Positions 4,366 through 58,910 of a stretch of DNA of 64,000 nucleotides are shown here, in pieces. Under the pieces are notes generated by a model. The model had not been told where the DNA came from. It searched no databases and worked only from the letters and a program-made list of their open reading frames with translations. The number at the start of each line of letters is the position of its first letter. Position 1 is the first letter of the stretch. The stretch is from Dimorphilus gyrociliatus (taxonomy: Eukaryota > Animalia > Annelida): positions 496,001-560,000 of the forward strand of contig CAJFCJ010000011.1 in assembly GCA_904063045.1 (NCBI GenBank), in the 5' to 3' direction. The position numbers and the translations under genes are program-made.

Positions 4366-4504
4366 ATTTAGTTTATTATCGCTCACTAAGTAAGGATGCC
4401 TAAAATTTTTCAAGCTCAGTCTGTTCTGAAAGCCGACAATTTTTTGCCATTCACCGGTTAGTTGTGGTAGTTAACCAATGATTACGCTCTAAGCGTCTGG
4501 TTAC

Positions 4505-4512
4505 AACCGGTT
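4505..4512. promoter_or_regulatory. Grainyhead/CP2-type palindrome AACCGGTT upstream of VPS72
   Basis: Exact AACCGGTT about 140 bp upstream of the VPS72 ATG; the ACCGGT core recurs near 4453 and twice at 6241-6261. Motif match only. Confidence 0.3.
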
Positions 4513-4519
4513 TGTTCAG

Positions 4520-4534
4520 CAGCGCCATCTGTGG
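4520..4534 (-). promoter_or_regulatory. CTCF-like motif (CCACAGATGGCGCTG on minus strand)
   Basis: Matches the AGRTGGCGC core of the invertebrate CTCF consensus; AGCGCCATC recurs at 27777 and 30861. Confidence 0.4.
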
Positions 4535-4754
4535 TGTTCTTAAAGCTCTGCGTTATATACTATCAAAAACATTTTTGCGCTTATTTTCTTCAAGCGAAAA
4601 ATGATCACAGCTTCACAATTTTATTATATAGATAGTCTCCCAAGGTCTTAAAACATGAAAAGAATAAGACTTCAAAATTTTTTATTGTATTGAAATTAGT
4701 AAATTTCCTATTTAAAGAATTAACAAAAACATTTTCCAAATAAGGATATATGTT

Positions 4755-4776
4755 TATATATATATATATATATATA
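4755..4776. repeat. (TA)11 microsatellite
   Basis: Direct reading of the sequence. Confidence 0.95.
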
Positions 4777-4838
4777 AGCGTTGTAACTTAGCAAGTAAAC
4801 AATTACTATACAAACAAATGAATTTGAGTTCATCTTAA

Positions 4839-6169
4839 CTACCAACTAGAGGCCTTGGTGAATCTTTTCTCCAAATATTCAGGACTATGCATATCCGATA
4901 ATATTTGAGACTCAATTTTATCTAGTGCACCCAAAGTAAGAACAAGCGTTTCATGTTTCAATATACTATGAACATTGAGTCCGTAAACGGGCATTACGCT
5001 ATATTGTTTATATTCACTAATAGCATCAGCGAAATATTGGTCCTCCAAAACGTCTTTTCTGAAAGTAAAATTTTATAAGTAATATAAAGCAAACAAGTTA
5101 CAACTTACTCATTTACAAAAAGAACAGATAATCCCCAGCCACGACTTTCTATTAGCTCTTCCAAATAACCTGGTTCATCAGTCGGCAGGCAGAGGTCGTT
5201 GACTATGTGCAAATTATCCTAAAGGCAAACAAGCATTTATATCATTGATGTTATGAGAAAAAATTATACAAACTTGAGCGAATTTACAAGATAAAGCTGT
5301 TCGTAATCCCAATACTCTCATTTTTTTGCCTAACATAAAAAAGTATCCTCTGGGACCCCTAGGTCCAAATGTTTTACCGCCTTTAAATAACAGTAATTAG
5401 CATGAGACATAATCTTGTCATTTAGTCAAAACTTACCTCCAATCCACAAAGGAGATCGAATACTGCCATGTCTGGCTCTACCAGTTCCTTTTTGAGGCCA
5501 AGGTTTACGGCCTCCTCCAGGTAATTCAGCACGATTACGTACAAATTCATAATTCTAGTGCACATTTATTCAATAATGTAATTAAAACATTCAAACAATA
5601 CTATTTTTATACTTACCACTTTCTTATATCTAGATTGCCAATGGGTATTCCACCAAAGGACATCGATTCTGTTGATAACTCTTCGTTATGAAAAAATTAT
5701 GAAAACTAAAGCGTGTAATAATACCGAGGAAAGGTGGCAAATATGTCGGGATGCAGGTCAACTATTCCCAACTTCTTATCATTAATGATTGATAAAGTTT
5801 CCAACCAAGCCTGTTTTGCTTGCTGATGTTTTGGGACTCTATATAACTCTCTTGAAGTCATTAAGGGTAAAGGTCTCGATAGAACCGATTCAGAATCTAT
5901 GAAAGGCACTTAAAGTTTATTTGAATTTATATTTCAATAAAAACTAAATATACCTAGAGATGATGCTGCTTTCACATCACTGCACATATTAGCAAAAAGG
6001 TTTGGTCGTATCTGAAGAGTGAAAATATTGCTCAAGGATGAAAGTTTACAAGGATTTGATTAAATATAAATTAAAAAATTAACAGTTTGTTATTAGGTTA
6101 TGAAAAAAAAAGTACCTTCATACTTCCAGTGAGAAATAAACGCCCGTTCAGAATAAGTCTACAATTCAT
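4839..6169 (-). CDS. MRPL4: Mitochondrial ribosomal protein L4 (uL4m); multi-exon
   Basis: [65 protein letters not shown] and [16 protein letters not shown] match uL4m. Exon 1 (6169-6116, [18 protein letters not shown]) looks like a mitochondrial presequence. Confidence 0.93.
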
Positions 6170-21840: not shown

Positions 21841-23875
21841 TTATTTTTTTAACTCTTCACGACTCTTCTTCCTGCCTAACTTTCGTCGCATTCTCATTCT
21901 CTCTCGTCTTAGTCTTCTCATATTTCTATCTCTCCTGCCCATTGGCATTCTGCCTCTCATTCTTCTATTCATCATTCTCTTTCGGTCTCCTCTAGGTCTT
22001 CTTATCTGACGTCGTCTTCTACCATGCCGTCTCCTTTCTTCCTCTTCTTCCTCTGGTGGAAGATTTTCTGCATCATTTTCTGGTTCCTCTGACTCATCAG
22101 CAACTTCTGACTCTTTATCAGCTTCCTCATTTTCCATCTCGTCCGAAATTTTTCCTTTTTTGGATAACTTTCTCTTCTTTTCCTTCTTCTGTCCAATACC
22201 CTTTCCATCAGATTCTTCATCCTCGGCATTTTCATTATCTTCATCAGCAACAATCTCTTCTACTTCTTCATCTTCCTCCTCTTTTGAAGGTAACTTTCTC
22301 TTCCATTTATCTTTTTCATCTTCATCAGTGTGCGATTCTTCCTCATCATCATAATTAGCATCACCTTGTTCGTAATCGTCGTCATAGTCATCGTAATTTT
22401 CGTCATATTCTGAATCTTCTGGTGGCTCTTCTGGTTCTTCCTCTTGTTCTTCTTCAGCTTTACTGGCTTCTTCAGCCTCTTTCTTTTGCTACAGTTTTAT
22501 ACAATAATTAAAAATACAGTAAACGCTTCGCTCGCAAATTGTAGGTCTGGTTATCTACTAACCTTCATTTCATCTTCGCCTTCAGACATTGGTTTCCAGT
22601 TAGCTTCCCCATGCTCTTCGGCATATTGTTCGTCATTTGTTAATAATATGTTATCGAAAACGGATCCTCCCTTTACTTGCCACAGTTCAAATCCAATTCC
22701 TCCAATTTCTTCAAAATTCAGTAATTGAGGATCTGGGGCGTAAAGCGGATTTGGTACAGTGGGTCTCTTCCACTTTCCTTTAAAGTTAGGGTTTTTCATA
22801 TCTCTTGGTTTCCAGATGCCTTTATAATTTGGATTTTCTTGCATAGGTGGCTCCCACTCTCCATCCATTTCTGTATCCCAATCTTTTGGTTTTTCAGCCT
22901 CTGGATCAGGAATTAACTGATTCTCATCCCAATCCGAGGGTTTCGTGTCATTGGGATCTGTTATGTATTCTCTTTCATCCCAGTAGGAAGGCTTAGTAGC
23001 ATTTTCATCCTATATAAATAAGAGTAAATATCTTACTCTTTAGGAGAATCATACTCTTCTAAAACAAAAAAGTTTACCGGTAAAGTTCTAGGAAGCAAAA
23101 ATGCATAATGATCTTCTAAGATTCCTTCGTGCTTCACTTGATTGTCAATTTTCACTTTATAGGTCTTATTCGCATACATAACCATTGTATATAAGTGTGT
23201 TTTTCCATCATTCTGACAAAGCATAGAATCGTGAAGATATTAAATTTAATAAATATACGATGACGCTATACCTCACAGCTAATATTGTACTTATTTGCGT
23301 GATATTTTTCCTTATAATGGAAAATAAGTTGAACTTTTTTTGTTTCCTGACCACATATATCTGGACCAAACATGATAAAATAAGGAGAGGAGCCGTTAAG
23401 GGCTCTGTGATCTAAGGTAGCTGGAAATAGCTACAGAAAATAATAAGAAATATAATATATATTCTAACATAATAGTTTTATTAAACACCTTAATGTATCC
23501 CCCACCACACTCGATATCTTCGACAAACTTTACTTGATACTGAATAACTAACGTTTCATTTAAATTGGAAAAGGGCGTAAAATGTGTTGATATTGCATGA
23601 AATTTGTTATCATCTATCATTTTTAAGCCTCGATCTCTGTCTTGATCTCCATAATACTCTGGAGTTCCAAGCTCAAAACCTCCGGCTGCTTCTCCAAGAG
23701 CGTCTGATTTAATCCATGTTCTTTCCCAAGAATCATCTAAAAATATAATTTTTTAAATAGAAATTGCAATTTCAAAATACAGTTATTTTTTACTTTTGAA
23801 CTCCTCTAAGAACCATATTTTTCTTTCTGAACAAACTGTCGTGAAAAGGATGCTAAATAATAGTAGCATATTCAT
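21841..23875 (-). CDS. CALR-like: Divergent calreticulin paralogue with extended acidic plus basic C-terminal domain; multi-exon, last exon 22488-21841
   Basis: Signal peptide MNMLLLFSILFTTVCS; IECGGGYIK, YFIMFGPDICG; three KPxxWD and three GxW P-domain repeats; GFELWQVKGGSVFDNILL. No transmembrane segment, so not calnexin. Confidence 0.92.
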
Positions 23876-35439: not shown

Positions 35440-38400
35440 TTAGCGTTGTATAACCCTGAAAGCTAGAACAACCATACTGAAAATCGCCCCGATGTTTGGA
35501 AGAAAGCAAAAACCTCCACATTGTTGAATGTCCCGCTGAAATAAATAAAATATTTTCGAATGGTATATAAATCTAGATAGATTGAAAGTTATAAACTTAC
35601 GCTCATACTGTTGTCAAAACAAAATTCAGGCCGTCTCCGAAATCTTTTTTCCACGTCACATTTTTCATCTATAAAATTCGGATCATCAGGTAAGATTGAG
35701 TTAAGGAAAAAATGGCTTTTAAAATAAGAATTTGATATCACTACAACTTTGAAACTATTTAAAAAAAGGATATTTTCTACTGGTTTATGATGGAGAAATT
35801 CATCATAACACGATGGCTCGCATTTCGTAGCTGCATCTTTAAATACGACTAAATACAAATTTGTTTCCTTTATTTCATAACCCTGAACACTTCTGAAAAA
35901 GTTACTTTTCATATTAGCAAAATGTTTATAATAAGAATGTAACACTACGTTACCCTCTCGTACATCCGTTACATCCGGAGAGTGTTCGTGTAAAATGAGG
36001 ATCAGATGATCTTTGCAATAAATATAGAGATTCTTTTTTAATACAACTTCTGTTTTGAGTGATAGGAGAACCAATGGCATCTACCGTGTTTGACACTGTA
36101 AATTTGATTGTTAGTAGAATACGTGTGTTATGATTTAAAGAATATTTACCAGATGAAGATGTAAGTAGTGCCCAAAATCTATAAAAGAAAATGGCATAAA
36201 AAATTAGATTTATAAAGATTCATCTATGAAGCTTACAAATTAAAATATCCAATTATAGTTGATATTTTCAAATTCCACCATTTAAAAGTCAAAAGTTCAT
36301 AGAAAAAAGGCTACAATGTAAATTTAAATTAAAACAATTGTTTAAAGCAATTGAATAATAATATACCAAATTTGCGGTTTTTCCAACGCCACTGACTGTG
36401 CGTTGAACAATACTGCAAGACGCTTGATAGTCGTAAACTTTTGTTCTGGATGATAAAATTTATTGACAAGATAATATAAAAGACTGATGATGGAAATTTA
36501 CTCATTAAATCTATTTTCCTTTATCAGTAATGCCATAATCTGCACAAACAATTGTTGATCAGTGATACTTCCCAAGAAAGAACCAATCTGTGTAAATAAG
36601 TTGCTTATATTAATTTAAATATGATAAACTTAATCTTGCGAACTTACATATTTATCGTCGTTTTCATTTGATGAAACTACCAAAAAGCCTCCATCATCTA
36701 ACAATAGACAGAAGTTTTTATCCGTACATCTATTTATATTACTTCTTAAAATATCTCTTAATGACTTTGGAGGTATTTTAACACCAATGACTGAAAAATA
36801 TAGGTATGCTTTGAACTATTTTCTTTTTTAATGAACGTTATCTTCATACCTGCGTCTTTCACAGTGCCGGAAAATGTTCCCACTGATTTTCCTGCAATTA
36901 TTGATGCTGTGCAATTTTCATCCATACATTCTATGAGAAAGCAGTGTAAATTAAGTATGTGGAATATTTTGTTTTTGAAATATTTGATACCGCTTGCGTC
37001 AGATGTAGAAAAAAACCATTTATCCAAGTCCAATGCTCTTTTGAAAAAAGTTGACTCCCAAACGTCAGCACTACTAAGATAAGTATCTCGAGATCTAAAA
37101 TAGCCATAGCCTATTAGACATATTCTAAAATATTTAATTAGCTTAAAAAACTAACGATTCTGGGTAAAATCTTGTCATTCCACTACCCGATGCAAAAAAG
37201 AACGACAGAATCGGTTGCCTTGGATTAGCTTCCTGCCAAATATTCGGCAAAGAACTAGTAGAAATTATATCAAATAACAAATGATCCAATAACTTATGGT
37301 CACCTTTGTATTAGAAAGTAATATTTATACGTAATTAGGTCGAAAATTAAGTTTTTATTACTTACAAGTTAAACTAGGAAGATCAATGTTTAATAAGTCT
37401 GGAATTGAAGTAATATTTTCGCACCATTCCCTGTAGAAATCAACAAGCCATTATTTTGACTTTACATCAAATTAAGCCTAATCTTACCAAGGAGAAATGA
37501 CCATCATTTCATCTTTCAACATGTGTTTTGCTTCTCTATAAAATCGATCTTTGTCTTTATTAACCTTGTCAAACATGTGCTTGCGATACGGTGGTAATAC
37601 AATAGCGATACTATATATGAAAGTCATTTAGAGAAATACCAAAGAAAATAGTAATTTTAAACAAGATACCTAAAAGTTGTATTTTCAATTCCAATATAGT
37701 GATACGTTCTTGTATTATGTAATATATGACCGTCACTAGTAACTCTAGTTAAACCTTTTACAGTCATAGTTGACTCAGTTTTATTAATCATCTCTTCTCG
37801 AACCTAGAGCGAATTAAAAATAGTTATTTACAGAAAATAGAATACCAGTCACAAACCAATTTTAGATCATCGCTTTCTATTTGAATTTCTAATAAATCTA
37901 CTGTAGGAGGATCCGATAACCATCCGTGTTGAGCTTTGAGATCAGGATGAAAAAGAATATAACCATTATTATTTATTGCAAACGCGTAACCGTTTGGCCC
38001 AAGCTGTGTTAAATTAAGAAGTTAAAAAGTAGTAATTTTATTATATATGGTGAAAAAATTACTTTCTTCCAAGGTATATGTCTCTTCAGTTCATCAATTG
38101 TCACATCAGTTCCCATTACTCCCAACAATGTGTCATTTTTCTGAAATATTTTAAACCTTAGAGATAAATATATGTAACAATTCTACTCTATTTACATCTA
38201 AGTCTCGCGTTCTGTTGTAAACAGGCAATGTTACAGTTGTCATAATACCCAATCTCTGTAATAAATATAAAAAAATATTCATTAAATTCGATTCTCCACA
38301 CAGAATAAAATTATATCAATATTGTCTAAAGCGTGCTAATGCGTAAATAATTATAGCATTCAACAAAGCTATAATAATAAAAGTAATAATAAAAAATATC

Positions 38401-41400
38401 AGATAAAATAGAAAAATCACAAACTTGGTGAAATCTGTTAGTCCAAACAAGTTGTCTCGCCTCATATGCAAGTTTTCCAAGGTAAATCTATTAGTAGGGT
38501 GAGGGCAAATGTGTTTTTGTATTAGTATTAAAACATATCAACAAGTTAATAAGTAATTAGAGGTAAAATAGAATGATTAAAAGAAGTTAGCATGAGAATT
38601 GTTATTTTTTGCAATTTTGTAGTAGTCTAGTTTGCAATGTCACTCTCAAAATAATTTTTACCATATAATCCAAATAAGTTTTGGACCATGTACGGTGAAT
38701 GGACCAAGTTTTAGGGTATTCTTTACTGATACCGTGTAAGTAGCTCTATCAGAATGTATTTTGCTTATTATATCAAATACTTTTATTTCTTATTTTACAA
38801 GTCATTATTTCTAGTCAATTATTAGTGAAAATTACCTGTACTGTAGATCGAATGTCACCCATTGCTGGTACGCGAGAATAATAGCCTATACAAAGAACAA
38901 AACAAGCATATTCAATTAAGATCATTCATCAAAATATCAACTAACCTCTATTAGCGCAAGCAATCCATCTAACTGCGGCGTAAGGATTTGGTTGAGGACC
39001 AACCATATAAGTAAATATTCTAACTTTCTTTTCTGGCCAATTATAGTTTTCGAAAACCTCTTCTGCAGTATCCGTTCCTCCGTCAGTAAGAAACATAATT
39101 ACTTTGTTGCAATTAGCTCCTTCTAAATCCCCCTCATCCATTGACTTGTTGAACTAAAGTATAATAATACTAGGAAGACTATCTTTAAATAATTGTTAAC
39201 ACAAACTTCCTTTATCCTTTCAAATGCAAATTTAAAAGCATTGTTGTATTTTGCCATTCCCTTAGCTTGTAAATCGTCTATAGCTTTCAAAAGAACCTGT
39301 AATCAAATATTTTTTTCAAATTTTACGAGAGAATAATTAACTTGTAAATTTAGATTGATTAAACTTACTTGTTTATTCCTTGGGTTTGCTTGAACAAATT
39401 TTCGGAAACATCCTACATAATCCGCTTGATCTGAAAACTAGTATAAAAATTCTTCTTAAAAAAGAAATTTCGTACATTGACTTTCTCATGCGTACGTCAA
39501 GGTGTTTTCTACTAAGTGAGCATGCATCCTTCAACAGAAGGAAAAAATTGTATTTTTTTAAAGGGTCAGGCGAGGATACAAACTTTAATTAATCAAAAAT
39601 TTTATTTACATACTTAATTATGTACAGATAATGATAAACAAGGCACATACTCAATCTATTAATTCTGTATAAGACATTAATTTAAGGAATATACTATTTA
39701 AACTTATTTCTTATTACATATACTGTATATAAGAAAATATTTTTCAACATAAATAAATTTACAACTTGAACTTAAATATAATTATGATTCATTAAGGTCA
39801 TTACTATATAATAAGTGATGGATAATTTGACTTTTGTGACGTTTACTATAGAAAATTATGTATAATATAACATGCGCCAGTTACATATTTTATAAAAATT
39901 TATCTAAAAACTGAAAAAATTAAATAACGTAAAAATAATCTACTTTTGTGCGCCATATAAAAATGCACTGCTAGACGGATATTTATGGAAAGGGATTCAA
40001 CTTTTCGTTGTCCAGGAAAATATCCAATAAACTACATAGTTTTAAGATATAAAAATATTTTTTTTTAAATAAGAACGCTTCCATTGGACACACAAAAAAT
40101 GAATCATAAGTATTTAGAGAAGGTTATGGAGGTGTTTTCTTTTTCCATATTTTCTACATCTTCATAACATATTTATACTTTTACAGCCTTACGTTTGCTA
40201 CAGCGACATAATCATTTTGTCCAAGCGTGCTAATTAGAGATTTAGCAGTCTCTTTTATTAAAGATAAGGCTTGTCCATATGTACTTCCACTCCTTTGAAA
40301 GCCGCATAGGTAAATATAATTATAATATTTAATTTCATCAATTTGGTATAAGTCTCACATGCAAAAACACTTGGTGAAAATTTGCACTCAATAGAAAAAT
40401 CTTACGCTCAAGACAGAAACAAAATCATCTTCACTGAGTAAATCTAAAAATGACTTTGCAGTTTCCTTTATAAGTAATAAATTTTGACCCTGAGTGCTTC
40501 CACTCCTGATGAAAGATAAATGGTAATAATAAAATTTCTAAGTTTCTTTTTATAGAAATTTAAAAACATGGCATATTATACATTTCATTTAAAAAAGATG
40601 TATTGTAAATGTTCTCTCAAGAGATCTCTGATTTAATATGTACTCTATTATTAATCTCTTTGTAACGAGCAATAATGATGATAAATCCATTATTGTTTGA
40701 AATAGACGCTTCGACGTCACAGATTAAGTTCAAATTCCTTAGGCAAAATATTTCTACTTACGTATCTATAAGTATTAGCATGTCTTTTGGAGAACTGGCT
40801 CCCTGTGTGTACCAAGGACGTCTACGGACATCATATAAATCTGGTTCAATGTTAGACCATTTTATTCCTGAGGGGAGAAATTTTATTTTATAAGTTTTTT
40901 TTTAAATTCAATTATTTACCGGGAAAAACCCGCAGAACTCCAGTTTGACTTCCAAAATACTGCAATAGCATATTGTCATAGTTTTTAGAATTATTATACC
41001 ATACTTCATCCAACTTGTTCGTCCATTTTAAGTCATTCAATATGTGTAAATCTAAAATTATTTAACCTTTTAGAAAAAGCTCTAAGACATTTTTAATTGT
41101 TTAATACAAACCACCCTCATAAATTTCTACTGGAATATGAACGCTTGAAGAATTATATGAAACATTTCGCATAAGACGTTCCTCGTAAACGAAGCCTTCT
41201 TCATTCTCCCTAATATTCCGAGCATTCTTATACGAAACATCTTCAAGCTGAAAACATTCATATATTTAATGTGTAATAAAAATATAATTTATTAGCTCCT
41301 TGTGTAAGTTTGAATTTACCTTTAGGTTAGGATCGTAACCATGCTGACCAGCGTATTTTTCGGCCTCGTTAACGGCATTCTGTTCGAAGAATAAATGCAC

Positions 41401-41925
41401 TTTACGTAAGAAGAGAGATAAAAAAAAACATGCCTCTAAAGACTCGATTTTTTCTTGCAGTATTTTATGTAATTTGTTAGCCAGTTTTCGAACTAAATGA
41501 CTGCCGTCTATATCCAAAGTAGTCGCATCAAATTCGTTGACTTTTTCGTTGTAATTTTTTACAATTTTTTCTATTAGTGTGTTACTTTTCAAAAAATCCA
41601 ATAGTGTCTTTTGGAATTTTGCAAAAAGAGTTGCAAGTCTGTAATATGAAAGATGCATATACATAAAAATTGTAAGATTATTATTTGTAATGGTTGAAAA
41701 ATCTAAAAATAGCGGCACACGTTCTTTGATCATCATCGAGTTTATCATAAATAAATATATGTAGAGTAGTTTTGAATAGTAATTATTATACTTTCAAGAT
41801 TACACTAGCAAAGGAAATGTAATATATTATGAGTAAAAATGCACTTACGGATCGACACCCTGCACTCTCTCTTGGATAAGACTTACACAAAAAAACATAA
41901 TTAAAATCTTCGGTGTTAGATGCAT
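35440..41925 (-). CDS. CACNA2D: Voltage-gated calcium channel auxiliary subunit alpha2-delta; more than 20 exons
   Basis: Signal peptide [23 protein letters not shown]; [29 protein letters not shown] (MIDAS); [13 protein letters not shown]; [20 protein letters not shown]; LLDDGGFLV; [10 protein letters not shown]; GPI-type tail [22 protein letters not shown]. Confidence 0.95.
38425..38487 (-). CDS. CACNA2D: alpha2-delta alternative exon Y ([21 protein letters not shown]), duplicate of exon X
   Basis: CTAATAG acceptor, GTTTGT donor, phase 0-0; aligns to the same human segment (EYLDVL..KQVQWTNVYLD) as exon X. Confidence 0.7.
38662..38745 (-). CDS. CACNA2D: alpha2-delta exon X ([28 protein letters not shown])
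   Basis: Phase 0-0, canonical splice sites; retains the YLD of the dCache1 pocket. Confidence 0.85.
40193..40292 (-). CDS. CACNA2D: alpha2-delta VWA exon B ([33 protein letters not shown])
   Basis: 100 nt, phase 2-0, AAG acceptor and GTAAGG donor. Confidence 0.88.
40406..40505 (-). CDS. CACNA2D: alpha2-delta VWA exon A ([33 protein letters not shown]), duplicate of exon B
   Basis: 100 nt, phase 2-0, CAG acceptor and GTAAGA donor; same length and phase as exon B and clearly homologous to it. Confidence 0.88.
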
Positions 41926-46548: not shown

Positions 46549-49500
46549 CTAGTCAGTATAAGATAATAGATAAATATTTCCTCGCTTGTCTCCTGCAATA
46601 ATTTTTCTTTCATTTGAATTGTCGAAAGATGCCAATTTGGTAACTGGTGCTGAACATAAAAACTCTCCTTTTAGTTCACTTTTGTTTGTTTGAAATCCCC
46701 AAGCTCTTATTAAACCATCACTAGAGGAAGTAAAGTATGTTTCTCCGATTTGTACAATAGAAGTAATTGAATCATCATGAAGCTTTAAAAAAATAAATTC
46801 AATAGTTAAAATTTTAAATCATTTTCTTTTCTGTATTTTGTTTATTTCTTACTTTATACTTCTCCTCGGATGATTTTCTTGAAATAAATAGATTTCCGGT
46901 AGAGTCGGTTGCCATTAGGGAATCAGAAGCGTCATTTTCTATGCATAGTCTCAAAGGATTTAACCATAAATTGGGGGTTTCGAAGCTTTTAATTTTTTTA
47001 TACAATTCAAAATCCTGCTTATCCTGAAAAAACAAAGCACATAACTTTTAGTAATGATCTATAATAACAATTAATTTTGTCTTACATTGTCTCCTAAAAC
47101 TTTATAAATTCGAACTACTCCCTTAGTGTTCGATATGCCAACTAATAATGAACCATCGGATTTATAGTTGGAAATCTGAGCTCCGATTACGTCCGAAGTT
47201 TTACTAGTTAAAAAAGTTTTTGTTGAAAAGATATGAAAAGCATTAATGCTAAATTTCTTACCATTGGCCCATTATTATGTTATGTAAAAATTCACCATTA
47301 GGTCTAAAACTTAATTTGCATAATTGTCCTTTGGCTGTCATCAGAATGGTGTTGTGCTTTTCAGGATTGTAAGTCACTTGAATTATGCGAGATTTTTTCC
47401 CAAGGCTTGAAATTTCATAATAACTACTTTGTCTATAACGTTAATCATTATGAATAAGATGTATTGAACAATACAATTTGTAACTTACTGTACGCAGATG
47501 TTATCTGCTTGAATGGTTAATATGTATGTTCTAAACTCAGCTGTTTCATAATTGACTATTAGTATCCATCTATCTGAGCTTATTCTCCAAGAATGCAAAT
47601 CTATGATGGGACCTTCAAAAGACGTCTTGAAAAAGAAAAAAGTATATAGTTTACCCGATTACAATAATTAGTCAATAAAACATACTTCAAGACCTTTACT
47701 TAATTCACTAAGAAGTGACAAATCATTATTCTCCAGTCTCCAAATTTTGCAGGCACCGTCTAAACTACCTGTTATAACTAACTTTTTACGCTCGTCGACA
47801 AATATTGCTGATATTTCAGAGCTATGTTGTAGTTTTAAAGACTGAACTTTATCTGGAACAGTCCAAATTCTTACTGACCCATCTCTTGAAGATGTTGCCA
47901 CGCGATTTCCTAAATTTTCAAGAGCATTTACTGGATAGGAATGTCCTTCAAGATCATCAATGTGTTCGCTCTAAAAAGTTTAAATATGCCAATTAATATT
48001 AAGAGAGACTTAACCTTATGTATCATACTATAATTGGCTTGAAAATAGATATTTTTCCATCATCCGAGGCAGTTACAACCATAACGTCTTTAACTTTTTC
48101 TGTATTTCTACTTAATTTGTTCTGGTCATGCTTTTCTTTCCATTCTTCCTTCGCAACTATTTTACTCCAGTCTTTTGATAGTATATCATCTACAACACTT
48201 TCTTCGGGTTTTCTTTCGTTCGTAACTAATATATCTATATCATTTAGTCTACTAGTGTCAGCTTGAATAGTTGTAAGTTCCGCTCCTCTTTTACTCCAAA
48301 TTTTTAATTGTCCATCGCTTGAGACACTTCCAATACATTTTTTCTGGAAGTATAAATTTTGTTTTTGGTTTTCCTTTCGATTAATTAACTAACCTTATGC
48401 AAAACACGATTTACTGCAGCTTCATGGCCTTTAAAGCTTGTTTCTATATCGCTGTCACCATTGATATTCAACATTTTCATAGTGAAATCATTACTACTAG
48501 TTAATAAATATCTAGATTCTCCGTCAATTAAGCATATAGAATTAATCCAATCAGGATGAACATTGGTATATGTTTTATTAATATTCAAAACACCTTTTTC
48601 TGATACTGTCCAATTCTTAATTGACATATCTCTACTGCATGTCCAGATTGTGTTATCGACAAATTCGATACCTTTAAACATATAAAAATTATATTGTAAT
48701 GTAATTGTAAAGCATATAATTTAGTGCAAACCTGTAACAGCTGATGTATGACAATTTTTGTTACTTAATATATAGAGCTTTTTCATGACTTTGTTGTATT
48801 TTACACAAATTATTTCGTTGTCAAAAGTTCCAACAAAAATTAAATCTCTACCATCAAGGCACAAGCTTGAAATTGAGGAACTGGTAACAGAAATCCGTGC
48901 GTCAATCACAATTGTATCTTTACATGATCTTAAAATGAATAGTTCTCCCGAGGTGGTCGTGCATGCTATAGTAATATCATCAGTATTTTGAAATACTTGT
49001 AAGCAAGTGATAGATTGTTGAGATATTCTGTTGAAAAATTAAAATTAACTTCAAGACTATTTATGTTTTCTTATTTTCATACTTTTTTGTTAAAATGCAA
49101 GTTTTTGTAAATATATCGTATATTCTAACATATCCATCGTGAAAAGCAGCTATAATTTCATTTTTTACTGGACTAAATATAACTCTGGTTACGCTACTAT
49201 CTTCGACAAATTCGCCAAATTTGATTCCAAGTTTTCCTGACCATACTTTGCCTAGACAATCATCTGCCACAGTGATTAGTTTTGATCCATTTTCATTGAA
49301 AACTAGGTCGTTTACAGGGGATATATGACCTTCGAAGCGCCCCAGCTTGGATCCTATTTCTCCAGACCACAGTGCTACTTCTCCATCTAATGCTGCAGAT
49401 GCTATATAAACACCAGATGGCGAATAAGAAACAGCACGTACAGCCGAATTGTGACCCCTTAGAATCTATAAAAAAAAGTATTTGATTTAAGTAGGAAAAG

Positions 49501-52500
49501 ATAAGTGCATCTAAATGACTTACAGCTATCCTTTTTCTACCAAATGCGCTATATATTCTTAAGATACTGCTCCAGTCTCCTATAACGACTTTTTCTCCTC
49601 TTGGATGATAGCAGACACAATTTATTGGTTTCCTATAGAAAAGGCGATATTTATTTCAAAATTTTATTCTAATTACTTTCTTACGAACTTTAAAGTTGTC
49701 GTCCATGTTAAATCTCCATCGCTACTCCAAAATTTCATTTGCGAATCCCATCCGACACTAACAAATTGTTTTCCATCAGGTTGAACTGCAATTGCTGAAA
49801 CATGGCGCCTATGACCAGTACAGACTTTTAATCTCTGAGTTGAATTAGCATCCCAAATGCAAATTGTATTATCATCTGCTGCCGTGCAAAGTCTGTTAGA
49901 TGATAGGAATTTTACGGCAGTTACTGAATCCTTATGGCCAATGAAAGTTTTTATTTCTTTACCAGAGGCCACATCAAAAAGGCGACAAATTCCGTCTGAA
50001 GAACCACAAATAATAGTCAATTTATCTCTTGAGGTTGATAGACAAGTAACGTTCTTCGAAATATTCGCTATCGTCATTTGGCAGTTTTTCGCTTCCTCCC
50101 TTTTATTAAACCACTCAAAAATATGCTCTTTAGCTTTATTTTCATTCTTCATAATAATTCTTGCATGCTTACAAGGAATTGATGTTTCGACACTATTCAA
50201 AGCTTGTTGATAAACAAGCTTAGGTTGTCTATGAAAAAGGAGAATTAACTCTATATTGAGCAAAATATATTTCGGTTTACCTGTGTAATAGTGTAGCATT
50301 ACTTCTAACAAAAAAGCTATAATCTTTAATTTCCTGTGTCTTGAGAAATTTCTTGGCAACCATACCCGATTCCTTCTTGCCGAATTCATAGCTAGTTAAC
50401 AATTTCACAGCAAGATTGTTTTCAAACATTTTTTCAATATAACTTAGATCAGTTAATAGCATAGATAAATATTCATATTGTTCGGAATGTATCTAAAAAA
50501 GTTATCATTCAATTAATTAGCAAACCAAATCCTCTTCGATTACTATGTCAAAATACGTACCAAGTGGGCGGCAACCTTGGAAAGATGATAATTACTACAC
50601 TCAGTTTTCCCCTTGATTAAACCGGATTTAACTATGCAGTAACCAGACAAAACAGTATGGAATATTTTTTCTGTTTGTCTATCTGTGTATCTTGAGGAAA
50701 TCGCTTTCAATATTTCTTGTTGGCCCAGTGATATATTGCCACTATTAAAGAAAGAAATATTGGTGTACATTTCCTTTCTATTATATTAAAATTCAATTAT
50801 TTTTCTTACGTATTGCTCTCTGAAGCCCTGATGAAACCTTTAATATTTCTTAGTAGAGGAGCTAATTTACCGTATGGTAACTTTTTGTATGATCCGCTGA
50901 AGTAATCTATAACGCGACTTAGATTTTTCAAATCAACCTTTTTGTCTTCGAAAATAGGCAGAATATTTTGAATATCAGTCTCTTTCATACCTAAGAATTA
51001 ACAATTAGTAAGAGCGATCATAATAATTGAGAGAGACAATTATTTACCGCCTAAAGAAAATGCTAAAAGAGACATGGAGCACTTTACTTCATTTTCGCCG
51101 AACTCATTTTCTAATCTCTCCAGAATTTGTGTGAGCAATGAAGGTAGAGTTGATGCCAAAGATTTTAGTTTCGTAGTTAACTGCAAAGATGTATAAATTT
51201 ATATATATATATATATATTTAAAAACATAGATAGACAAATTTTCTTGGAGGACTTTAACAATTATTAGAAGATCAATACGAACTTGTTCAAATACGCCAA
51301 ATATTTTCAGTTCCTCACAGGCTATTTTTAGATAAAGAGGATTATTAGAATCCTTTTTATTTGTTATTTGAGATATTTGATTATTGAATCCCTTTTCATT
51401 GAGAGATTTGCCGTATTTTTCCAAATTTTTTCTTACGACGACTGACTTGTCAAAGACATCTAAATTTCCGACTTGAAAGGTTACAGGCCTTAAACGCTGT
51501 AGACATTTGGCTGAAGGACTGAAATCAAGAACCGTAAAGATGATAAGCACATTTTGAGGAATGCTTGAGGGTAGCCAATTAAGAGATTTTTCGTGTCCTT
51601 TATTGTCAGTTTTGTCGAAATCGTCAAATACTATTGCTACTGGACTGCAATTGATATTTGATATTTCGTTTAGAATTGCTCCAAAAGTTTCTACCAAACT
51701 TCTGTAATATCAAAGTCTTATAAGTACTTTAGCACTCTAAAACTACATAAACTTACTCATAATTTTCAGGAATAATCAAATCTATTCTAAAAAAGCGTAC
51801 TAATTCTGTGCATATTCTGTACAAGCATGATGGAATACTCTCTGACCCTTCGAAAAGGCCGAAGCTGTGAACTAGGACAGTCGAAAATTTTTTCCTTAGA
51901 TTGAGCAGTACATTTGCCGCTAAACTGCTCTTTCCAGTTGCAACTTTACCACATATAGTAACGATCGCACCATTCCTAGATAAATCACCAAATTTGGAAC
52001 TTAAGTTATTCACCAATTTCTTCCTGCCGGCAAATTCCTCTCCTAAATTTTTGAAATAGAAGTTAAATCTCTCTGTCTCATGAGATATAGCATCCAAATG
52101 GATCAAATTGTCACTCTTCTTTAATTTATCCATATGGCGAGTAAGTTGATTTAAAACATTAAACCCTAAATCTTGTAAATTTGTTACTATTGGCTTTCCA
52201 TCATAAATTCCACCCCAGTCACAGTCATACCTTAAATTATATAAGTTTTAGTTAGATATTTTGGCATCTGTTAACATTTTATACATACTCAATACAGTTG
52301 GATCCAGATGTCTTTACCAGCTGTTTTAAATTATTCATTTTTTCTTTGCTATCCTCGCTTTCAGCTTGAAATTTATTGCGAAGGTCGGTGGGAACTTGCC
52401 TGTTTTATAAGATTCTCAATAAAAAGCAAAATTCATATATTAGATTCTTACGATAAGAAGTTTTTCTTTCGTAAATAAAAAAAGCATGTTTTTTTATTTT

Positions 52501-55500
52501 CTAACGCTAAACGCATCTCGATTTCAGTGATACTCTTTTTCTTATATTCATCAGACAAATTTATATCCTTGAAATCTGCTTCTTGTGGTAAAAACCCATA
52601 CCTTTCACCTAAAAGACCGATAACTACATCAGCCTTAGTAACTTCATTTAGACAAAGAGAGACTAATTTTTCTGTTTCGCTTTCCGTTATACCCCAGCGT
52701 AAATCAACGTCGATAATGTCATAGAAGAGATTAGCAGCTTTTGAACGAATTTCAGGGATAATAAATCGAGTTAGTAGATCTCGTTCTCCATGCATATCAG
52801 TAAACGTTGATGAGATAAACACTCTTATTTCTTTCCATCTAAAATTTATCGAAGTGAGGGTAAATTAAAACCAAATATATGGAAAATACCTTGGTACGCT
52901 TATCTGAATTGGTAATGGCCGCTCAATTTTTGAAAAATCTTTCTTTTGTTTAAGTTCAGGCAAATTGTATTTTTTGTCGAGCTTGTTGATATAATTTAGC
53001 AGTCCTTTATTACCTCTTTCAGTCACAAATCTGTAATATTACAACAAGTTAAAAAGTATTTATAGCTCATTAACTTTATCGGTACCGTAATAATTGATCA
53101 CTGTAACCGGATAGGAAAATGTCATTTTCGTGGACCTTTTCGCTTTCTCTATTCACACCGACGGAAGTCCCTGACAAGTTAACATGTACATACATCAGAT
53201 CCGGATTTACCAAATGACGAAATGCGTTTAGGAAGCAGTTTAGAATTTTAAGCTCATCTTTGTCAGGAGCGTTTGATGATAGCATAACAATATTATCAAT
53301 CTAAATAGAATATAGAAAATTTTTATAAACCTAATAATAATATTGTATAATTTATATACAGACCTTCTTTCTATTGACTAAGAACTCATCTAAATAATGC
53401 AGGAAAGTCTTGTTCATGTCAGATACATTTATATCCTGAAAAATTATGTATACAGTACTAACGATGATATTTAAACATAAAACATACGAAATTCTTAGCC
53501 TGTTGTTGAATACTAGACATATTTTCTAGAATAGTTCCTTTTTCTAATTCAATCTCTTCATAGTTGCTGTTGCTGTAAAGTAGATACTGGCACTCTTCAC
53601 AGACGTATTTAAACATGAGACCTAAAAGGGCCCCAACGTCTAACTTTGTTTTCTAAAAGACATTAGGTTTAGCAAGTGACGAGTAAATCAATTTAAAATC
53701 TTACAGCTTGAGTGAGGCCGCTCGACGTCTGACATGGTCTAAGCATCAATTGGCTGACCTCCAATAGGATAATGGTATGACCCTTAATAGGCGCAACATT
53801 ATGAATGGTAGCTAACGATACAGCCTGATCCAAAGCGTTTTTATATTTGCTAATGATAGTTGGATCGTATTTCATCTTGATTCTAAAATACAAATAGTTG
53901 CATTCTTATTGAATTTAGTTTTTATTCCTACTAATACACACTTTTTTACATATGTTGCCGGATTATTACGATTCCCGCCCCTTACATTTCTTCTACCATA
54001 TCCACGAGCAGGGACTGATACCGGTTTTTTTGGATTCAGTTTTTCTTCCAACCATTCATTATATTGTTTCTCCAGTGTTGTAAGCACATCATATGCTGAA
54101 AAGAATCTAAACGGAAACTGTTTCGAATTAACTATGCTCTTTTCATCAGTCAATCTTCCTAAAATCATATTATGATGACTCTCCGATATACCAGCTTTAA
54201 TTAGGTTTCTTAGATTACGCAACATTGCCATGAAGGGTAATTTCTTATGATCAATTAAACCTTCCCATACGAAAGATTTGTTTCCCTTCATAGAAATTTG
54301 AGTTTCCCATGTCTCTGGTGTAGGTAGTTTCATTCTCTTTCCACATTTAGATTGATCGAATGTTCCATCCAATCCTAATTTATAAAATTCTTCAAGATTT
54401 TCAGGATATCTATAAACATCGTGCTCTGTTACAGTTTCGTAACAATAAGGTTTATAAAAATATTTTTCTAACAAACCTTTTTCCTAAGAGGCAAAGAACG
54501 TTGTTTACTGGCGTACGTATATGCAGTTTGCGAATTAACTGCTTTAAAGTGAATGATTTGCTAGAGCGCTCTTGTAATTTTGTCAATGCTTCTTCCTATA
54601 CATACAGAAATCTTAAGAATTAGTTAAAAAGACACTAATTTAAATAATTACGAATGATTCCTTCGGCGGAGCCGATCGTGTCCCTCTTCTAAAATTTCCC
54701 CTACCTCTTGTAGAACCTCTCGAAGCAAAATTATTTGTTCTCAAGGCTTTTCGCTTTAGCCTCTTTTTTTTTGATTTAACCTTATCTTTATCATATTTAG
54801 CCAATTGAAAAGCATTAAAACTGGCAAACTTTTTTGTCATTACTCTTCTTAAAGAAGCTGGTAGGGATGAGAAATTATTCTTCTTTCCCTCTTTCAAAGT
54901 TAAGGAAATTTCAGCAACACTTATCCAATCTGACGGCAATACAATAGTGTTGTCGAAATATTTCTTGAGAAATGGACGGCATTGGGGACTGTTTAAAGTT
55001 TTAAATGTATTTATTTATAATAAAAAACTATAAATAAAATTAAACCTACTTATTAGAGGAATAAGCCAATAAAAAGTTACTTGTCGAACGAATGTTTAAT
55101 TCTAATCTGGTATAAAGAGCTACCTGAGAAAGCAATTGAATTTGAAATTAGCTAGAATGTAAAGTATATTTACTAATATAAATTCACCTTTAGAACAAAT
55201 TCTGGATCATCCATTGAAATTTTATTACAAACAGATATCAAATCTCCTCTTACTGGATCATCTTCAGCTTGAAAATTGGGTGACCTAATCAAACTTCCAC
55301 TTACCAGATGGATGAATCGTCTCTGTTAAGAAAGGCAACACTTTAAATATTTGCATTTACGAAGAATCTTTCTAATCTAGTAACCTTTAGATCTTCAATA
55401 GTCTCTTCTTTCTCACTACCCCCTATTTCATTTGCAACTACTTTTCTATGGACATCTATCTTCTCAATATCCTCTGCTATCAATTCATAGCTGGGAGCTT

Positions 55501-56239
55501 TACAGTCATCTTCATATTTGATAAGATCTTCTTTTATGAGTTCAGTCGTTTTTTTAATTTGACTTTTCTTATTCTTCAGAGCATTCTTTGTATTAAGTAT
55601 TTGTGTGGGAAGTGTTTGATTGCTTGTCAAACTTAACAATCCATCTTTCATAAAAGAAGGTACTTTTGAGAAAGTGCATTGCTGGTTGAAAATACTGCTC
55701 CTCTCGCTTATTGAATGTATAGCCGACCCGCTTGATAGACTAAATAGTTTTTCATTGAGCTGGGCTTTCGGCTGAACTAATGAAGATTTTTTGTTACTAA
55801 ATGAAATTGAAGGATTTAAAAAGCCTGATCCAGTTAAAAGAGTAGAAGGGCCATTAAGAGATGAACATTTAAAACCGGAAGAACAGCCTGCAAAATGAAG
55901 GTTTGTTAGGCCTGATAATAAAATGGTGATTGAGCAAGAACAACATAATCTTGCCACCTAATTACGTATGCTTTTAACAAAGATAAATCTAAATATCTAA
56001 ACAGTCATATCTCTAGAATAATCGTCGAGATAAAGACGTAGGCAGCGTATTCTTCTAAATATCGAAATAGTTCCGGTATTTGATGGGACAACATTTAATT
56101 ATTTTTTACCATTAAAAACATTAAAAACGTATAAACGCTTTTAAACACCTCTATGTAATAGAATAGGTAGAATGACAACTTTGAACAAACCTGTCAAATC
56201 CTTAGATGGTCTTAAGCAGCTACTTAAATTAACACTCAT
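46549..56239 (-). CDS. TEP1: Telomerase protein component 1 (vault/telomerase-associated; TROVE, DUF4062, NACHT, WD40); many exons
   Basis: TROVE signature LPTPETWETQIS..LPFMAMLRNLRNL..QFPFRFFSAY; FISSTFTDMHGERDLL; Walker A GKVATGKSS; GNPLYL-like NNPLYLKIACEEL; many WD40 repeats up to the stop at 46549. The start is inferred from splice phase. Confidence 0.92.
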
Positions 56240-57926: not shown

Positions 57927-58625
57927 CTAGCATATTGGACAAATAGAGTTAGATGTTTCTGAGCAATAGTAGCAAGCCGAGTGTTTGCACGGTAATAATC
58001 GTATATCGAAAGGCAAATCATTACAGTACACACATTTGCCTTCTAAATCTTTTGAAGAAGAAATAAAACGGAAAAGACGCGATCGTACGGAAGAAGCATT
58101 AATTAGTGGTAATATAAAAAATAGTAGCTCTGAAAAAGCGTGCCATAGCATTTCTCTATCCATAAATTCAAAACTGACCATATCCTTCAGTCTTTGAGGA
58201 GAGGAAAATCTGCTGTTTATACCTAAAACTCTTTCCGTTATTGTCAAAAATTTTCCTTGAATTAAAAATACTATAAAGTTGATTAACTTTGCAAGCTCCC
58301 ATACGTCAGAGAATTTTGTAACAGAAAACTTTTGTCCAATGTATGGAATTACATACGATAAAATAAAATAGTTTCTTCGTTGAGCATTGGATGAAGGATA
58401 GCTAATATCAAGCAGTTTTTGTCCAACTGTTGATCCACATTTCCTTACAGTACTCCTCCAGATTATGAACTGTAGTCCTAATTCGATTTCAGAATCAAAT
58501 CGTGATAAAATTGACGTCTTTATATATTTTACGCTTTCAAGCAAGTATTCCTTTATAATATTAGTAACTTCACTATCTAATGCAGATGCATCCAGTTGGC
58601 TGACCCTCAAAGCAGGTTGTGCCAT
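57927..58625 (-). CDS. PEX2: Peroxisome biogenesis factor 2 (RING E3), intronless CDS, 232 aa
   Basis: LRVSQLDASALDSE, TVGQKLL, FEFMDREMLWHAFSELLFFILPLIN and C3HC4 RING CVYC..CKH..CYYC..CPIC. Confidence 0.92.
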   Translation of the reverse strand: MAQPALRVSQLDASALDSEVTNIIKEYLLESVKYIKTSILSRFDSEIELGLQFIIWRSTVRKCGSTVGQKLLDISYPSSNAQRRNYFILSYVIPYIGQKFSVTKFSDVWELAKLINFIVFLIQGKFLTITERVLGINSRFSSPQRLKDMVSFEFMDREMLWHAFSELLFFILPLINASSVRSRLFRFISSSKDLEGKCVYCNDLPFDIRLLPCKHSACYYCSETSNSICPIC

Positions 58626-58910
58626 AATAAACAATATCGGGCGATAATGTAGTTAATTATACCGAAACCCAGAGAAAACTGGTAGTTTTTCGCAACCATT
58701 ATCCGAAATTGGTCGCTTCCGTAGAGTAGTATGCTTGTTGTTGATATAGCCTGACATGAATTACAAGGCAGTGTATATATACGATTTGTTATAAAGCACT
58801 GATCAACATTGCAAATAGTAATAAATATGTTGAATCCAGCCACATTATAATTAACTGGTAAGTACAAGGCCTCAAGGGATGATGATGGCCGCAGAAGGGC
58901 AGTAACCACT

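What the first reader, a model, noticed from the sequence alone, without database searches (positions are those of the whole stretch)
38425..38745. Duplicated alternative exons that rewrite the alpha2-delta amino-acid/gabapentinoid pocket
Seen: between ..IRSTVQ and [11 protein letters not shown] lie two phase 0-0 exons, X (28 aa, ..[11 protein letters not shown]) and Y (21 aa, [17 protein letters not shown]). Each aligns to the single human segment EYLDVL..KQVQWTNVYLDAL. The remaining pocket residues (YDVRRRPW, the Thr in IMTT, the Asp in GTDV) lie in constitutive exons. Known: the Tyr and Asp of VYLD (about Y450/D452 in human alpha2-delta-1, numbering from memory) line the dCache1 pocket that binds L-leucine and gabapentin. 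Inference: X keeps Y-x-D while Y changes it to F-x-Q and shortens the loop, giving a splice-controlled switch of ligand sensing. I do not know of such a switch in vertebrate CACNA2D genes.
Basis: partly seen in the sequence, partly recalled or inferred. Interest (0 to 1): 0.8.

Follow-up and report, generated by a model that had tools for sequence, protein, structure and literature searches.

The report
Swappable pocket exon in alpha2-delta
The calcium-channel helper gene (alpha2-delta) of a tiny marine worm has two alternative copies of one small exon, both kept by selection and used one at a time, and the swap replaces residues that in the human protein line the leucine/gabapentin pocket; related exon sets exist in other annelids, molluscs and a ribbon worm, but any effect on ligand binding is untested.

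Summary
Exons X (38745-38662, 28 aa) and Y (38487-38425, 21 aa) lie on the minus strand. They have AG/GT borders and phase 0-0, and sit between constitutive exons of an alpha2-delta gene of Dimorphilus gyrociliatus.

The public annotation already holds both products: DgyrCDS8435 (Y) and DgyrCDS8436 (X). They differ only in this exon. A transcriptome contig joins the upstream exon straight to Y and skips X, so Y is the major form there. I saw no RNA read carrying X. Its use rests on the PASA-derived isoform and on purifying selection against a related genome (omega 0.08 for X, 0.04 for Y, synonymous sites near saturation).

The pair is the local form of an old tandem exon set:
- at least four copies in Capitella;
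- two or three in Owenia;
- three in Lymnaea and Lineus;
- isoform pairs differing only here in Haliotis, Lineus and a cephalopod-like transcriptome.

By alignment, X keeps human Y452 and D454, and so the full amino-acid-binding motif. Y has Phe, lacks the Asp and is shorter. A change in ligand binding is inferred, not shown.

I found no paper describing this. I rate it a new member of a known kind (mutually exclusive duplicated exons).

The parts
35443..41925 (-). Coding span of the alpha2-delta gene (29 coding exons; public products DgyrCDS8435, 1058 aa, and DgyrCDS8436, 1065 aa)
   Evidence: Both proteins map residue for residue onto the window. Pfam finds VWA_N, VWA, dCache_1 and VGCC_alpha2. 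The model of residues 100-643 matches human alpha2-delta-1 in 8fd7_D with TM 0.87.
38836..38885 (-). Constitutive upstream exon (..[17 protein letters not shown]), ends in phase 0
   Evidence: Sequence. Lies in the RNA contig: bin depth 26.4 equals 19 nt at depth 273.5. Mapping.
38662..38745 (-). Exon X, 28 aa, used in DgyrCDS8436. Carries the equivalents of human Y452, D454, A455, L456 (Y435, D437, Y438, M439; codons 38676-38662).
   Evidence: Conserved with intact splice sites in a related genome, omega 0.08. No contig cover in run X1.
38488..38661 (-). 174-nt intron between X and Y. Not alignable to the related genome by blastn.
   Evidence: No conserved pairing elements found.
38425..38487 (-). 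Exon Y, 21 aa, used in DgyrCDS8435 and in the main RNA contig. Has Phe in place of Y452, no acidic residue in place of D454, and is 7 residues shorter.
   Evidence: Joint 38255->38425 is listed and record arithmetic gives 38487->38836.. Omega 0.04.
38196..38255 (-). Constitutive downstream exon ([20 protein letters not shown]) with the T463 equivalent (T446, 38237-38235)
40812..40859 (-). Constitutive codons for the W225, Y238, R243 and W245 equivalents (W207, Y215, R220, W222; motif [10 protein letters not shown])
38105..38107 (-). Constitutive codon for the D493 equivalent (D471 in GVMGTDV)

Best explanation
X and Y are two alternative, mutually exclusive versions of coding exon 12 of the Dimorphilus gyrociliatus alpha2-delta gene on contig C11. 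One pre-mRNA gives two proteins that are identical except for 28 versus 21 residues.

The stretch encodes the end of a helix, a loop, and the strand of the first dCache_1 module. In human alpha2-delta-1 this strand supplies Y452, D454, A455 and L456 to the leucine/gabapentin pocket.

- X keeps Tyr and Asp. [quoted passage not shown]
- Y replaces the Tyr by Phe, has no acidic residue there and has a shorter loop.

Y is the major form in whole-animal RNA and X is a minor or restricted form.

The pair is a reduced version of a tandem exon set that predates the split of annelids, molluscs and nemerteans.

Shown: exon structure, Y inclusion, two annotated products, purifying selection on both exons, and the presence of the set in other phyla. 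Inferred: that X is spliced in vivo in particular cells, and that the swap changes ligand affinity or selectivity. How joint inclusion or joint skipping is avoided is unknown, since both would stay in frame.
For: Sequence and splice sites.

RNA: a 2581-nt contig of depth 273 has all CT..AC joints. It shows joint 38255->38425. Record positions 1814-2213 are exactly filled by the exons 150+78+60+63+49 nt without X.

Annotation: P0152 and P0184 differ only in this exon and map at 100% on the window. Alternative variants in that annotation were generated by PASA from transcript alignments.

Selection: against the related genomic contig L016, X is 87% and Y 82.5% identical in DNA, with AG/GT kept, while the X-Y and Y-downstream introns are not aligned. 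X has 7 synonymous and 4 non-synonymous changes (omega 0.08, dS 0.72). Y has omega 0.04.

Other taxa:
- tandem copies with AG/GT and phase 0-0 in Capitella, Owenia, Lymnaea and Lineus;
- isoform pairs that differ only here in Haliotis, Lineus and a cephalopod-like RNA cluster.

Pocket: residue list from the gabapentin structure paper, motif definition, mapping by alignment.
Against: - No RNA read or contig with X was seen here. X has zero contig cover in the only run found, and two word searches for X-bearing fragments were blank.
- X and Y are not significantly alike pairwise or against a generic exon profile.
- Three other pocket positions differ from human in both isoforms, so even the X form may not bind leucine-like ligands.
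- Gastropods keep the exon set although the key Arg is Gln, so the conserved role of the set need not be ligand binding.
- AlphaFold2 gave low confidence over X (pLDDT 32-35) and over the RRR loop in the X model, so the models do not test the pocket.
- In gastropod annotations one extra copy occurs together with the canonical one.
Confidence: 0.7

Rival explanations
1. The swap is real, but its purpose is not ligand sensing. The exchanged helix-loop-strand changes folding, trafficking, or contacts of the dCache_1 module with the channel alpha1 subunit or other partners. The loss of Tyr and Asp would then be incidental.
For: Most of the difference between copies lies in the first two thirds of the exon (helix and loop), not only in the pocket strand. 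Gastropods and the D. gyrociliatus C6 paralogue have Gln for the key Arg, yet keep the exon set or the Y-type exon. Three other pocket residues already differ from human in both isoforms.
Against: In annelids, bivalves, cephalopods and the nemertean the rest of the motif (RRR, W, D) is intact, and at least one copy per set keeps Y-x-D while others lose it. This pattern is expected if the pocket is the target.
Confidence: 0.25
2. X is an unused relic of an ancestral exon and only Y is functional. The X isoform in the annotation would be an artefact or splicing noise.
For: No contig of run X1 covers X. X has a weak, A-rich tract before its acceptor. The C6 paralogue has lost any X-type exon.
Against: The open frame, both splice sites and 24 of 28 residues are kept across a divergence where synonymous sites are near saturation (omega 0.08), while the neighbouring introns are unalignable. 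An X-only product is in the PASA-based annotation.
Confidence: 0.04
3. X and Y are independent cassette exons rather than an exclusive pair. X+Y or neither can also be made, because all combinations stay in frame.
For: Both exons are multiples of 3 in phase 0-0. Haliotis isoform X2 and several mollusc models carry two copies in a row. No exclusivity mechanism was found.
Against: The two annotated D. gyrociliatus products are X-only and Y-only and the RNA contig is Y-only. A doubled strand would not fit the dCache fold. Several two- and three-copy models come from ab initio predictions that also misjoin neighbouring exons, for example Capitella.
Confidence: 0.08

Closest known systems
Vertebrate alpha2-delta-1 splice regions A, B and C (Angelotti and Hofmann 1996; Lana et al. 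2014, as reviewed in PMC9901441)
   Same: Alternative splicing inside the cache domains of an alpha2-delta subunit. One variant (lacking C) has lower gabapentin affinity.
   Different: A and C are cassette inserts and B is an alternative acceptor. [quoted passage not shown] They do not replace pocket residues. Here a whole exon carrying Y452/D454/A455/L456 is exchanged for a diverged duplicate.
Mutually exclusive tandem-duplicated exons in ion-channel genes (e.g. CaV1.2 exons 21/22, CaV2.2 e37a/e37b)
   Same: Adjacent homologous exons of similar size, one chosen per transcript, changing a functional surface (papers listed).
   Different: Those are in the pore-forming alpha1 subunits. No such pair in an alpha2-delta gene turned up in four literature searches. 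Here all combinations stay in frame, so frame incompatibility cannot enforce exclusivity.
dCache_1AA universal amino-acid-binding motif (Gumerov et al. 2022, PMC8915833)
   Same: The X isoform has every motif residue by alignment: Y215, R220, W222, Y435, D471.
   Different: The Y isoform has Phe at the third Tyr. In bacteria and vertebrates the motif is fixed in the gene. Here one motif residue is supplied by an exchangeable exon.
Database isoforms of mollusc and nemertean alpha2-delta-2-like genes (RefSeq, e.g. Haliotis cracherodii X4/X5, Lineus longissimus X2/X3)
   Same: Same exon position, and isoforms that differ only in this 27-29-residue stretch. One copy has Y-x-D and others lack it.
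   Different: Those sets have three copies (order B, C, A in gastropods). D. gyrociliatus has two, with the canonical type first. Its Y type ends in FHQ like the last Capitella copy.

Membership tests
Voltage-gated calcium channel alpha2-delta subunit | Domain set VWA_N + VWA + dCache_1 + VGCC_alpha2 | tested here: met
   Pfam hits in both isoforms. VWA_N (91 bits), VWA (51) and VGCC_alpha2 (144) are over their cut-offs. dCache_1 scores 44 against a cut-off of 45, just under.
Voltage-gated calcium channel alpha2-delta subunit | Fold like solved alpha2-delta-1 | tested here: met
   The model of residues 100-643 (mean pLDDT 80) matches 8fd7_D and 7vfs_B with TM 0.87-0.88 and 35-36% identity. Cachd1 matches only at 0.59-0.62.
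Voltage-gated calcium channel alpha2-delta subunit | VWA MIDAS motif DxSxS | tested here: met
   ILIDTSGS is present. The SGS part is itself on a duplicated exon.
dCache_1AA amino-acid-binding domain (YxxxxRxW ... Y ... D) | N-terminal part Y, R, W | tested here: met
   [10 protein letters not shown]: Y215, R220, W222 in a constitutive exon.
dCache_1AA amino-acid-binding domain (YxxxxRxW ... Y ... D) | Third Tyr (human Y452) | tested here: inconclusive
   The two isoforms differ at this residue. X isoform: Tyr435, met. Y isoform: Phe, not met.
dCache_1AA amino-acid-binding domain (YxxxxRxW ... Y ... D) | Final Asp (human D493) | tested here: met
   D471 in GVMGTDV, a constitutive exon.
dCache_1AA amino-acid-binding domain (YxxxxRxW ... 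Y ... D) | Actual binding of an amino acid or gabapentinoid | not testable with these tools
   Needs binding assays. The AlphaFold2 models were of low confidence at the pocket.
Mutually exclusive tandem-duplicated exons | Adjacent exons of the same phase and similar size at one position | tested here: met
   84 and 63 nt, both phase 0-0, 174 nt apart.
Mutually exclusive tandem-duplicated exons | Sequence homology between the copies | tested here: inconclusive
   Pairwise score is not above shuffles and a generic profile is blind to both. Shared Tyr at position 2, Trp and a late aromatic residue appear in the family alignment. Y ends like Capitella copy 4, and X ends like the mollusc canonical copy.
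Mutually exclusive tandem-duplicated exons | Transcripts carry one copy, never both or none | tested here: inconclusive
   Y-only RNA contig plus X-only and Y-only annotated products. No raw reads were available to count X+Y or skip-both forms.

The most novel reading that the evidence does not exclude
An exon set more than 500 million years old lets lophotrochozoan neurons or muscles choose, from one alpha2-delta gene, between two subunits. One has a complete amino-acid/gabapentinoid pocket. The other has the motif tyrosine removed. Sensitivity of calcium-channel trafficking to free amino acids would then be set by splicing. In D. gyrociliatus the motif-less form is the default and the complete form is restricted.
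Probability: 0.35. Interest if true: 0.7.

Novelty: new member of a known kind. Interest (0 to 1): 0.5.

Why it matters
The natural role of the leucine/gabapentin pocket of alpha2-delta is still unclear. Here, in several phyla, evolution has kept for a very long time alternative exons that differ at a motif residue of that pocket. This offers a ready-made pair of natural variants for asking what ligand occupancy does to channel trafficking and function.

It also has a practical use for annotation. Several public gene models (Capitella, Lymnaea, Biomphalaria, Elysia, siboglinids) string the alternative copies together and so describe proteins that probably do not exist.

Tried and rejected
- PDB sequence searches with X and Y alone gave nothing at E up to 10; the queries are too short.
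- The direct X-Y alignment is not above shuffles.
- A profile of this exon built from 40 non-Dimorphilus proteins finds the Lineus and Capitella copies but not X or Y.
- Two word searches meant to catch short or long RNA-derived proteins carrying X returned no candidates, not even the query's own cluster. They say nothing either way.
- Only one sequencing run held the locus. It is kept as contigs, so junction counts and rare forms could not be read.
- Inverted-repeat scans of the X/Y introns gave only A/T-rich pairs that differ between the window and the related genome. I therefore propose no docking/selector structure.
- A U2/U12 switch is rejected, since all four sites are ordinary GT-AG. 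Frame incompatibility is rejected because both lengths are multiples of 3.
- AlphaFold2 models of both natural isoform fragments were made. Confidence at the pocket segments is too low to compare geometries: X 32-35, Y 57-67, RRR loop 46-49 versus 73-76.
- Locus look-ups for Haliotis X2, Lineus X2 and Elysia failed because only the longest product is indexed.
- No hand-joined spliced model was built or searched. The public proteins P0152 and P0184 were used instead.

Full report
**What is there.** Read on the minus strand, the window shows five features in order.
- An exon ending ..GDIRSTVQ at 38836.
- Exon X at 38745-38662: 84 nt, [28 protein letters not shown], acceptor ctgatag|, donor |gtaaaa.
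- A 174-nt intron.
- Exon Y at 38487-38425: 63 nt, [21 protein letters not shown], acceptor ctaatag|, donor |gtttgt.
- The exon [20 protein letters not shown] from 38255.

Both X and Y are in phase 0-0.

**The gene and the organism.**
- The genome has 77.9 Mb in 349 contigs, and the window is C11:496001-560000.
- A search with the neighbouring 70-aa exon, followed by a word search, returned two Dimorphilus gyrociliatus proteins. They are DgyrCDS8435 (P0152, 1058 aa) and DgyrCDS8436 (P0184, 1065 aa).
- Every residue of both maps onto the window in 29 coding blocks from 41925 to 35443.
- The two proteins differ only at residues 412-432/439, which is Y in P0152 and X in P0184.
- Pfam finds VWA_N, VWA, dCache_1 and VGCC_alpha2 in both.
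- An AlphaFold2 model of residues 100-643 matches human alpha2-delta-1 in the gabapentin complex 8fd7_D with TM 0.87.

So this is an alpha2-delta subunit gene, and the public annotation already lists an X-only and a Y-only product. The genome paper states that alternative variants were generated by PASA from transcript alignments. The X isoform therefore probably rests on a transcript, but I could not see that transcript.

**RNA seen here.** Only one public run held the locus. It is stored as contigs. Laid on 35900-41800, it gives a 2581-nt contig of depth 273 whose joints all have CT..AC ends, that is, minus-strand GT..AG introns.
- Joint 38255->38425 is listed, so Y is joined to the downstream exon.
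- Record positions 1814-2213 (400 nt) lie between the pieces ending at 37800 and starting at 38945. They are filled exactly by exons of 150, 78, 60, 63 (Y) and 49 nt.
- The bin 38658-38854 has depth 26.4, which equals 19 nt of the upstream exon at 273.5.
- X therefore has no contig cover at all.

Y is thus the major form in that sample. Contigs drop rare variants, so this does not show that X is silent.

**Selection on both exons.**
- The 70-aa fragment P0001 (97% identical) led to genomic Logan contigs from five runs of one series, SRR233722xx.
- L016, part of a 22-kb contig, is collinear with the whole gene at about 72-88% DNA identity.
- In a MAFFT alignment both exons are conserved islands with AG and GT kept. 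The blastn match ends 7 nt after the X donor, and the X-Y and Y-downstream introns are not aligned.

| Exon | Synonymous / non-synonymous changes | dS | dN | omega |
|---|---|---|---|---|
| X | 7 / 4 | 0.72 | 0.06 | 0.08 |
| Y | 8 / 3 | 1.44 | 0.06 | 0.04 |
| Flanking constitutive exons | | 1.1-2.3 | | 0-0.14 |

The last 13 residues of X ([13 protein letters not shown]) are unchanged. A dead exon would not keep its frame, its splice sites and 24 of 28 residues at this distance. I take X as a working coding exon.

**Paralogue.** The genome has four loci with a VWA_N domain. The closest paralogue lies on C6 (P0002 = DgyrCDS4704). It has only a Y-type exon (IYLEHLAHSAKEFVWTTSYHK) after a 64-nt intron, with no room for an X. 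It also has RRQ instead of RRR.

**The same position in other animals.** Proteins returned show several kinds of sequence between ..IR..VQ and GLGMMTT.
- A canonical kind, for example EYIPVLSRP..W.NIY.D...
- Kinds that lack the Y-x-D, for example ..WTSSHK.., ..DPR and ..WTNIKLAAN.

Genomic loci show separate exons with AG/GT and phase 0-0.
- *Capitella teleta:* at least four copies (3589-3672, 4022-4105, 4316-4399, 4533-4622 of L021). The last ends ..WTNIQAPFHQ, like Y.
- *Owenia fusiformis:* two clear copies and a possible third.
- *Lymnaea stagnalis:* three copies (B, C, A).
- *Lineus longissimus:* three copies.

Isoform pairs that differ only in this exon exist in three further cases.
- Haliotis cracherodii X4/X5.
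- Lineus X2/X3.
- Two 1065-aa proteins from RNA-length Logan contigs of a cephalopod-like animal (P0174/P0185).

Haliotis X2 carries the B copy together with the canonical one. Several non-RefSeq models string two or three copies together. For Capitella this is clearly a misjoined model, because the true downstream exon is missed.

The set is therefore old, reaching at least the common ancestor of annelids, molluscs and nemerteans. D. gyrociliatus keeps a two-copy version. Copy order differs between annelids (canonical first) and gastropods (canonical last). One-to-one orthology of copies across phyla is not established.

**Relation to the pocket.** The gabapentin-bound structure paper lists the pocket residues W207, V209, Y219, W225, Y238, R243, W245, Y452, D454, A455, L456, T463 and D493. 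It names Y238, R243, W245, Y452 and D493 as the conserved amino-acid-binding motif (motif defined). I mapped these through a 50-sequence alignment. It included a vertebrate alpha2-delta-1-like protein whose residues match the human letters at 12 of the 13 positions. D493 was mapped by the GVMGxDV motif instead.

| Human residue | D. gyrociliatus equivalent | Location |
|---|---|---|
| W225, Y238, R243, W245 | W207, Y215, R220, W222 | constitutive |
| T463 | T446 | constitutive |
| D493 | D471 | constitutive |
| W207, V209, Y219 | L189, Y191, V201 | constitutive, differ from human in both isoforms |
| Y452, D454, A455, L456 | X: Y435, D437, Y438, M439 | exon X |
| Y452, D454, A455, L456 | Y: Phe at the Tyr; no acidic residue and two residues fewer at D454-L456 | exon Y |

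The loop before the strand is also five residues shorter in Y. In the related genome Y ends FHE rather than FHQ.

Whether they change ligand binding is inference. Two things caution against a simple reading: the three constitutive differences from human, and the fact that gastropods keep the exon set with Gln at the key Arg.

**Structure models.** Both natural isoform fragments were folded with the same 49 homologues.
- *Y model:* mean pLDDT 80.3. It forms a strand over ..VWTNRFH.. followed by the RLGIMTT strand, at pLDDT about 57-67.
- *X model:* mean pLDDT 78.9. It has pLDDT 32-35 over the last two thirds of X and 46-49 over the RRR loop.

They may reflect the alignment more than biology, and I draw no functional conclusion from them.

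**How exclusivity is achieved.** This is not resolved.
- All sites are ordinary GT-AG and the X-Y intron is long enough to be spliced.
- Every combination stays in frame.
- Inverted repeats in the introns are A/T-rich and not shared with the related genome.
- X has the weaker acceptor tract. This fits an exon that needs an activator, and so restricted use, but that is a guess.

**Literature.**
- The known alpha2-delta-1 splice regions A, B and C lie elsewhere in the cache domains. They are inserts, not replacements.
- Searches combining alpha2-delta or CACNA2D with mutually exclusive exons, Lymnaea, molluscs or invertebrate splice variants found nothing on this exon set.
- The library lacks most subscription journals, so this is weak evidence of absence.

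**Verdict.** The finding is real and well delimited. It is a conserved alternative-exon pair, already present as two database products but apparently undescribed. It exchanges part of the alpha2-delta ligand pocket. The functional claim remains a hypothesis. As a kind of mechanism it is familiar. As a handle on the natural role of the alpha2-delta pocket it is of moderate interest.

Noticed in passing
window 40193-40504 (-): A second duplicated exon pair encodes the SGS of the VWA MIDAS motif. M2 (40291-40193) is in both annotated isoforms. M1 (40504-40406) is in neither and has no contig cover in run X1. Yet M1 is 32/33 residues identical in the related genome L016 and has AG/GT borders, so it is probably a further, unannotated alternative exon. 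The same stretch is noted in scan finding s1-081408.
   Followed up: partly
window 39438-40192 (-): A 755-nt intron, against the usual 53-62 nt in this gene. It is covered by two unspliced RNA contigs (39408-39744 and 39795-40222) at depth about 19 versus 273 for the exons. The RNA assembly of the gene breaks here. This could be intron retention or a separate transcript.
   Followed up: no
G000:C6:2205702-2214122 (L007-L014): The closest paralogue, DgyrCDS4704, has only a Y-type exon at this position. It has Gln instead of the third Arg of the RRR motif, so it probably lacks the canonical carboxylate contact.
   Followed up: partly
L021 (Capitella teleta KB293488.1) 3281-5560: Public model ELU15918.1 strings three alternative copies together. 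It omits a fourth (4022-4105, HHVEVVARPLCLSIAHDPVWSEIYLDAF) and misses the true downstream exon ([16 protein letters not shown], about 5498). Similar concatenations occur in models from Lymnaea, Biomphalaria, Elysia, Lamellibrachia, Ridgeia and Paralvinella.
   Followed up: partly
Proteins P0153-P0155, P0173 (gastropods): Gastropod alpha2-delta-2-like proteins have RRQ in place of RRR. Bivalves, cephalopods, annelids and the nemertean keep RRR.
   Followed up: no
L016-L020 (Logan contigs of SRR23372228, -216, -229, -232, -231): Genomic contigs of an unnamed close relative of D. gyrociliatus. They are collinear with this gene, with exons about 82-88% identical and synonymous sites near saturation. 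They are useful for testing other exon pairs in this genome.
   Followed up: partly
window 46552-55957 (-), 21844-23752 (-), 57930-58652 (-): Open frames of the neighbouring genes look like a TEP1-like protein (NACHT and WD40-like repeats), a calreticulin/calnexin-type protein with a long acidic then basic tail, and a RING-finger peroxin-like protein. This is from reading translations only.
   Followed up: no
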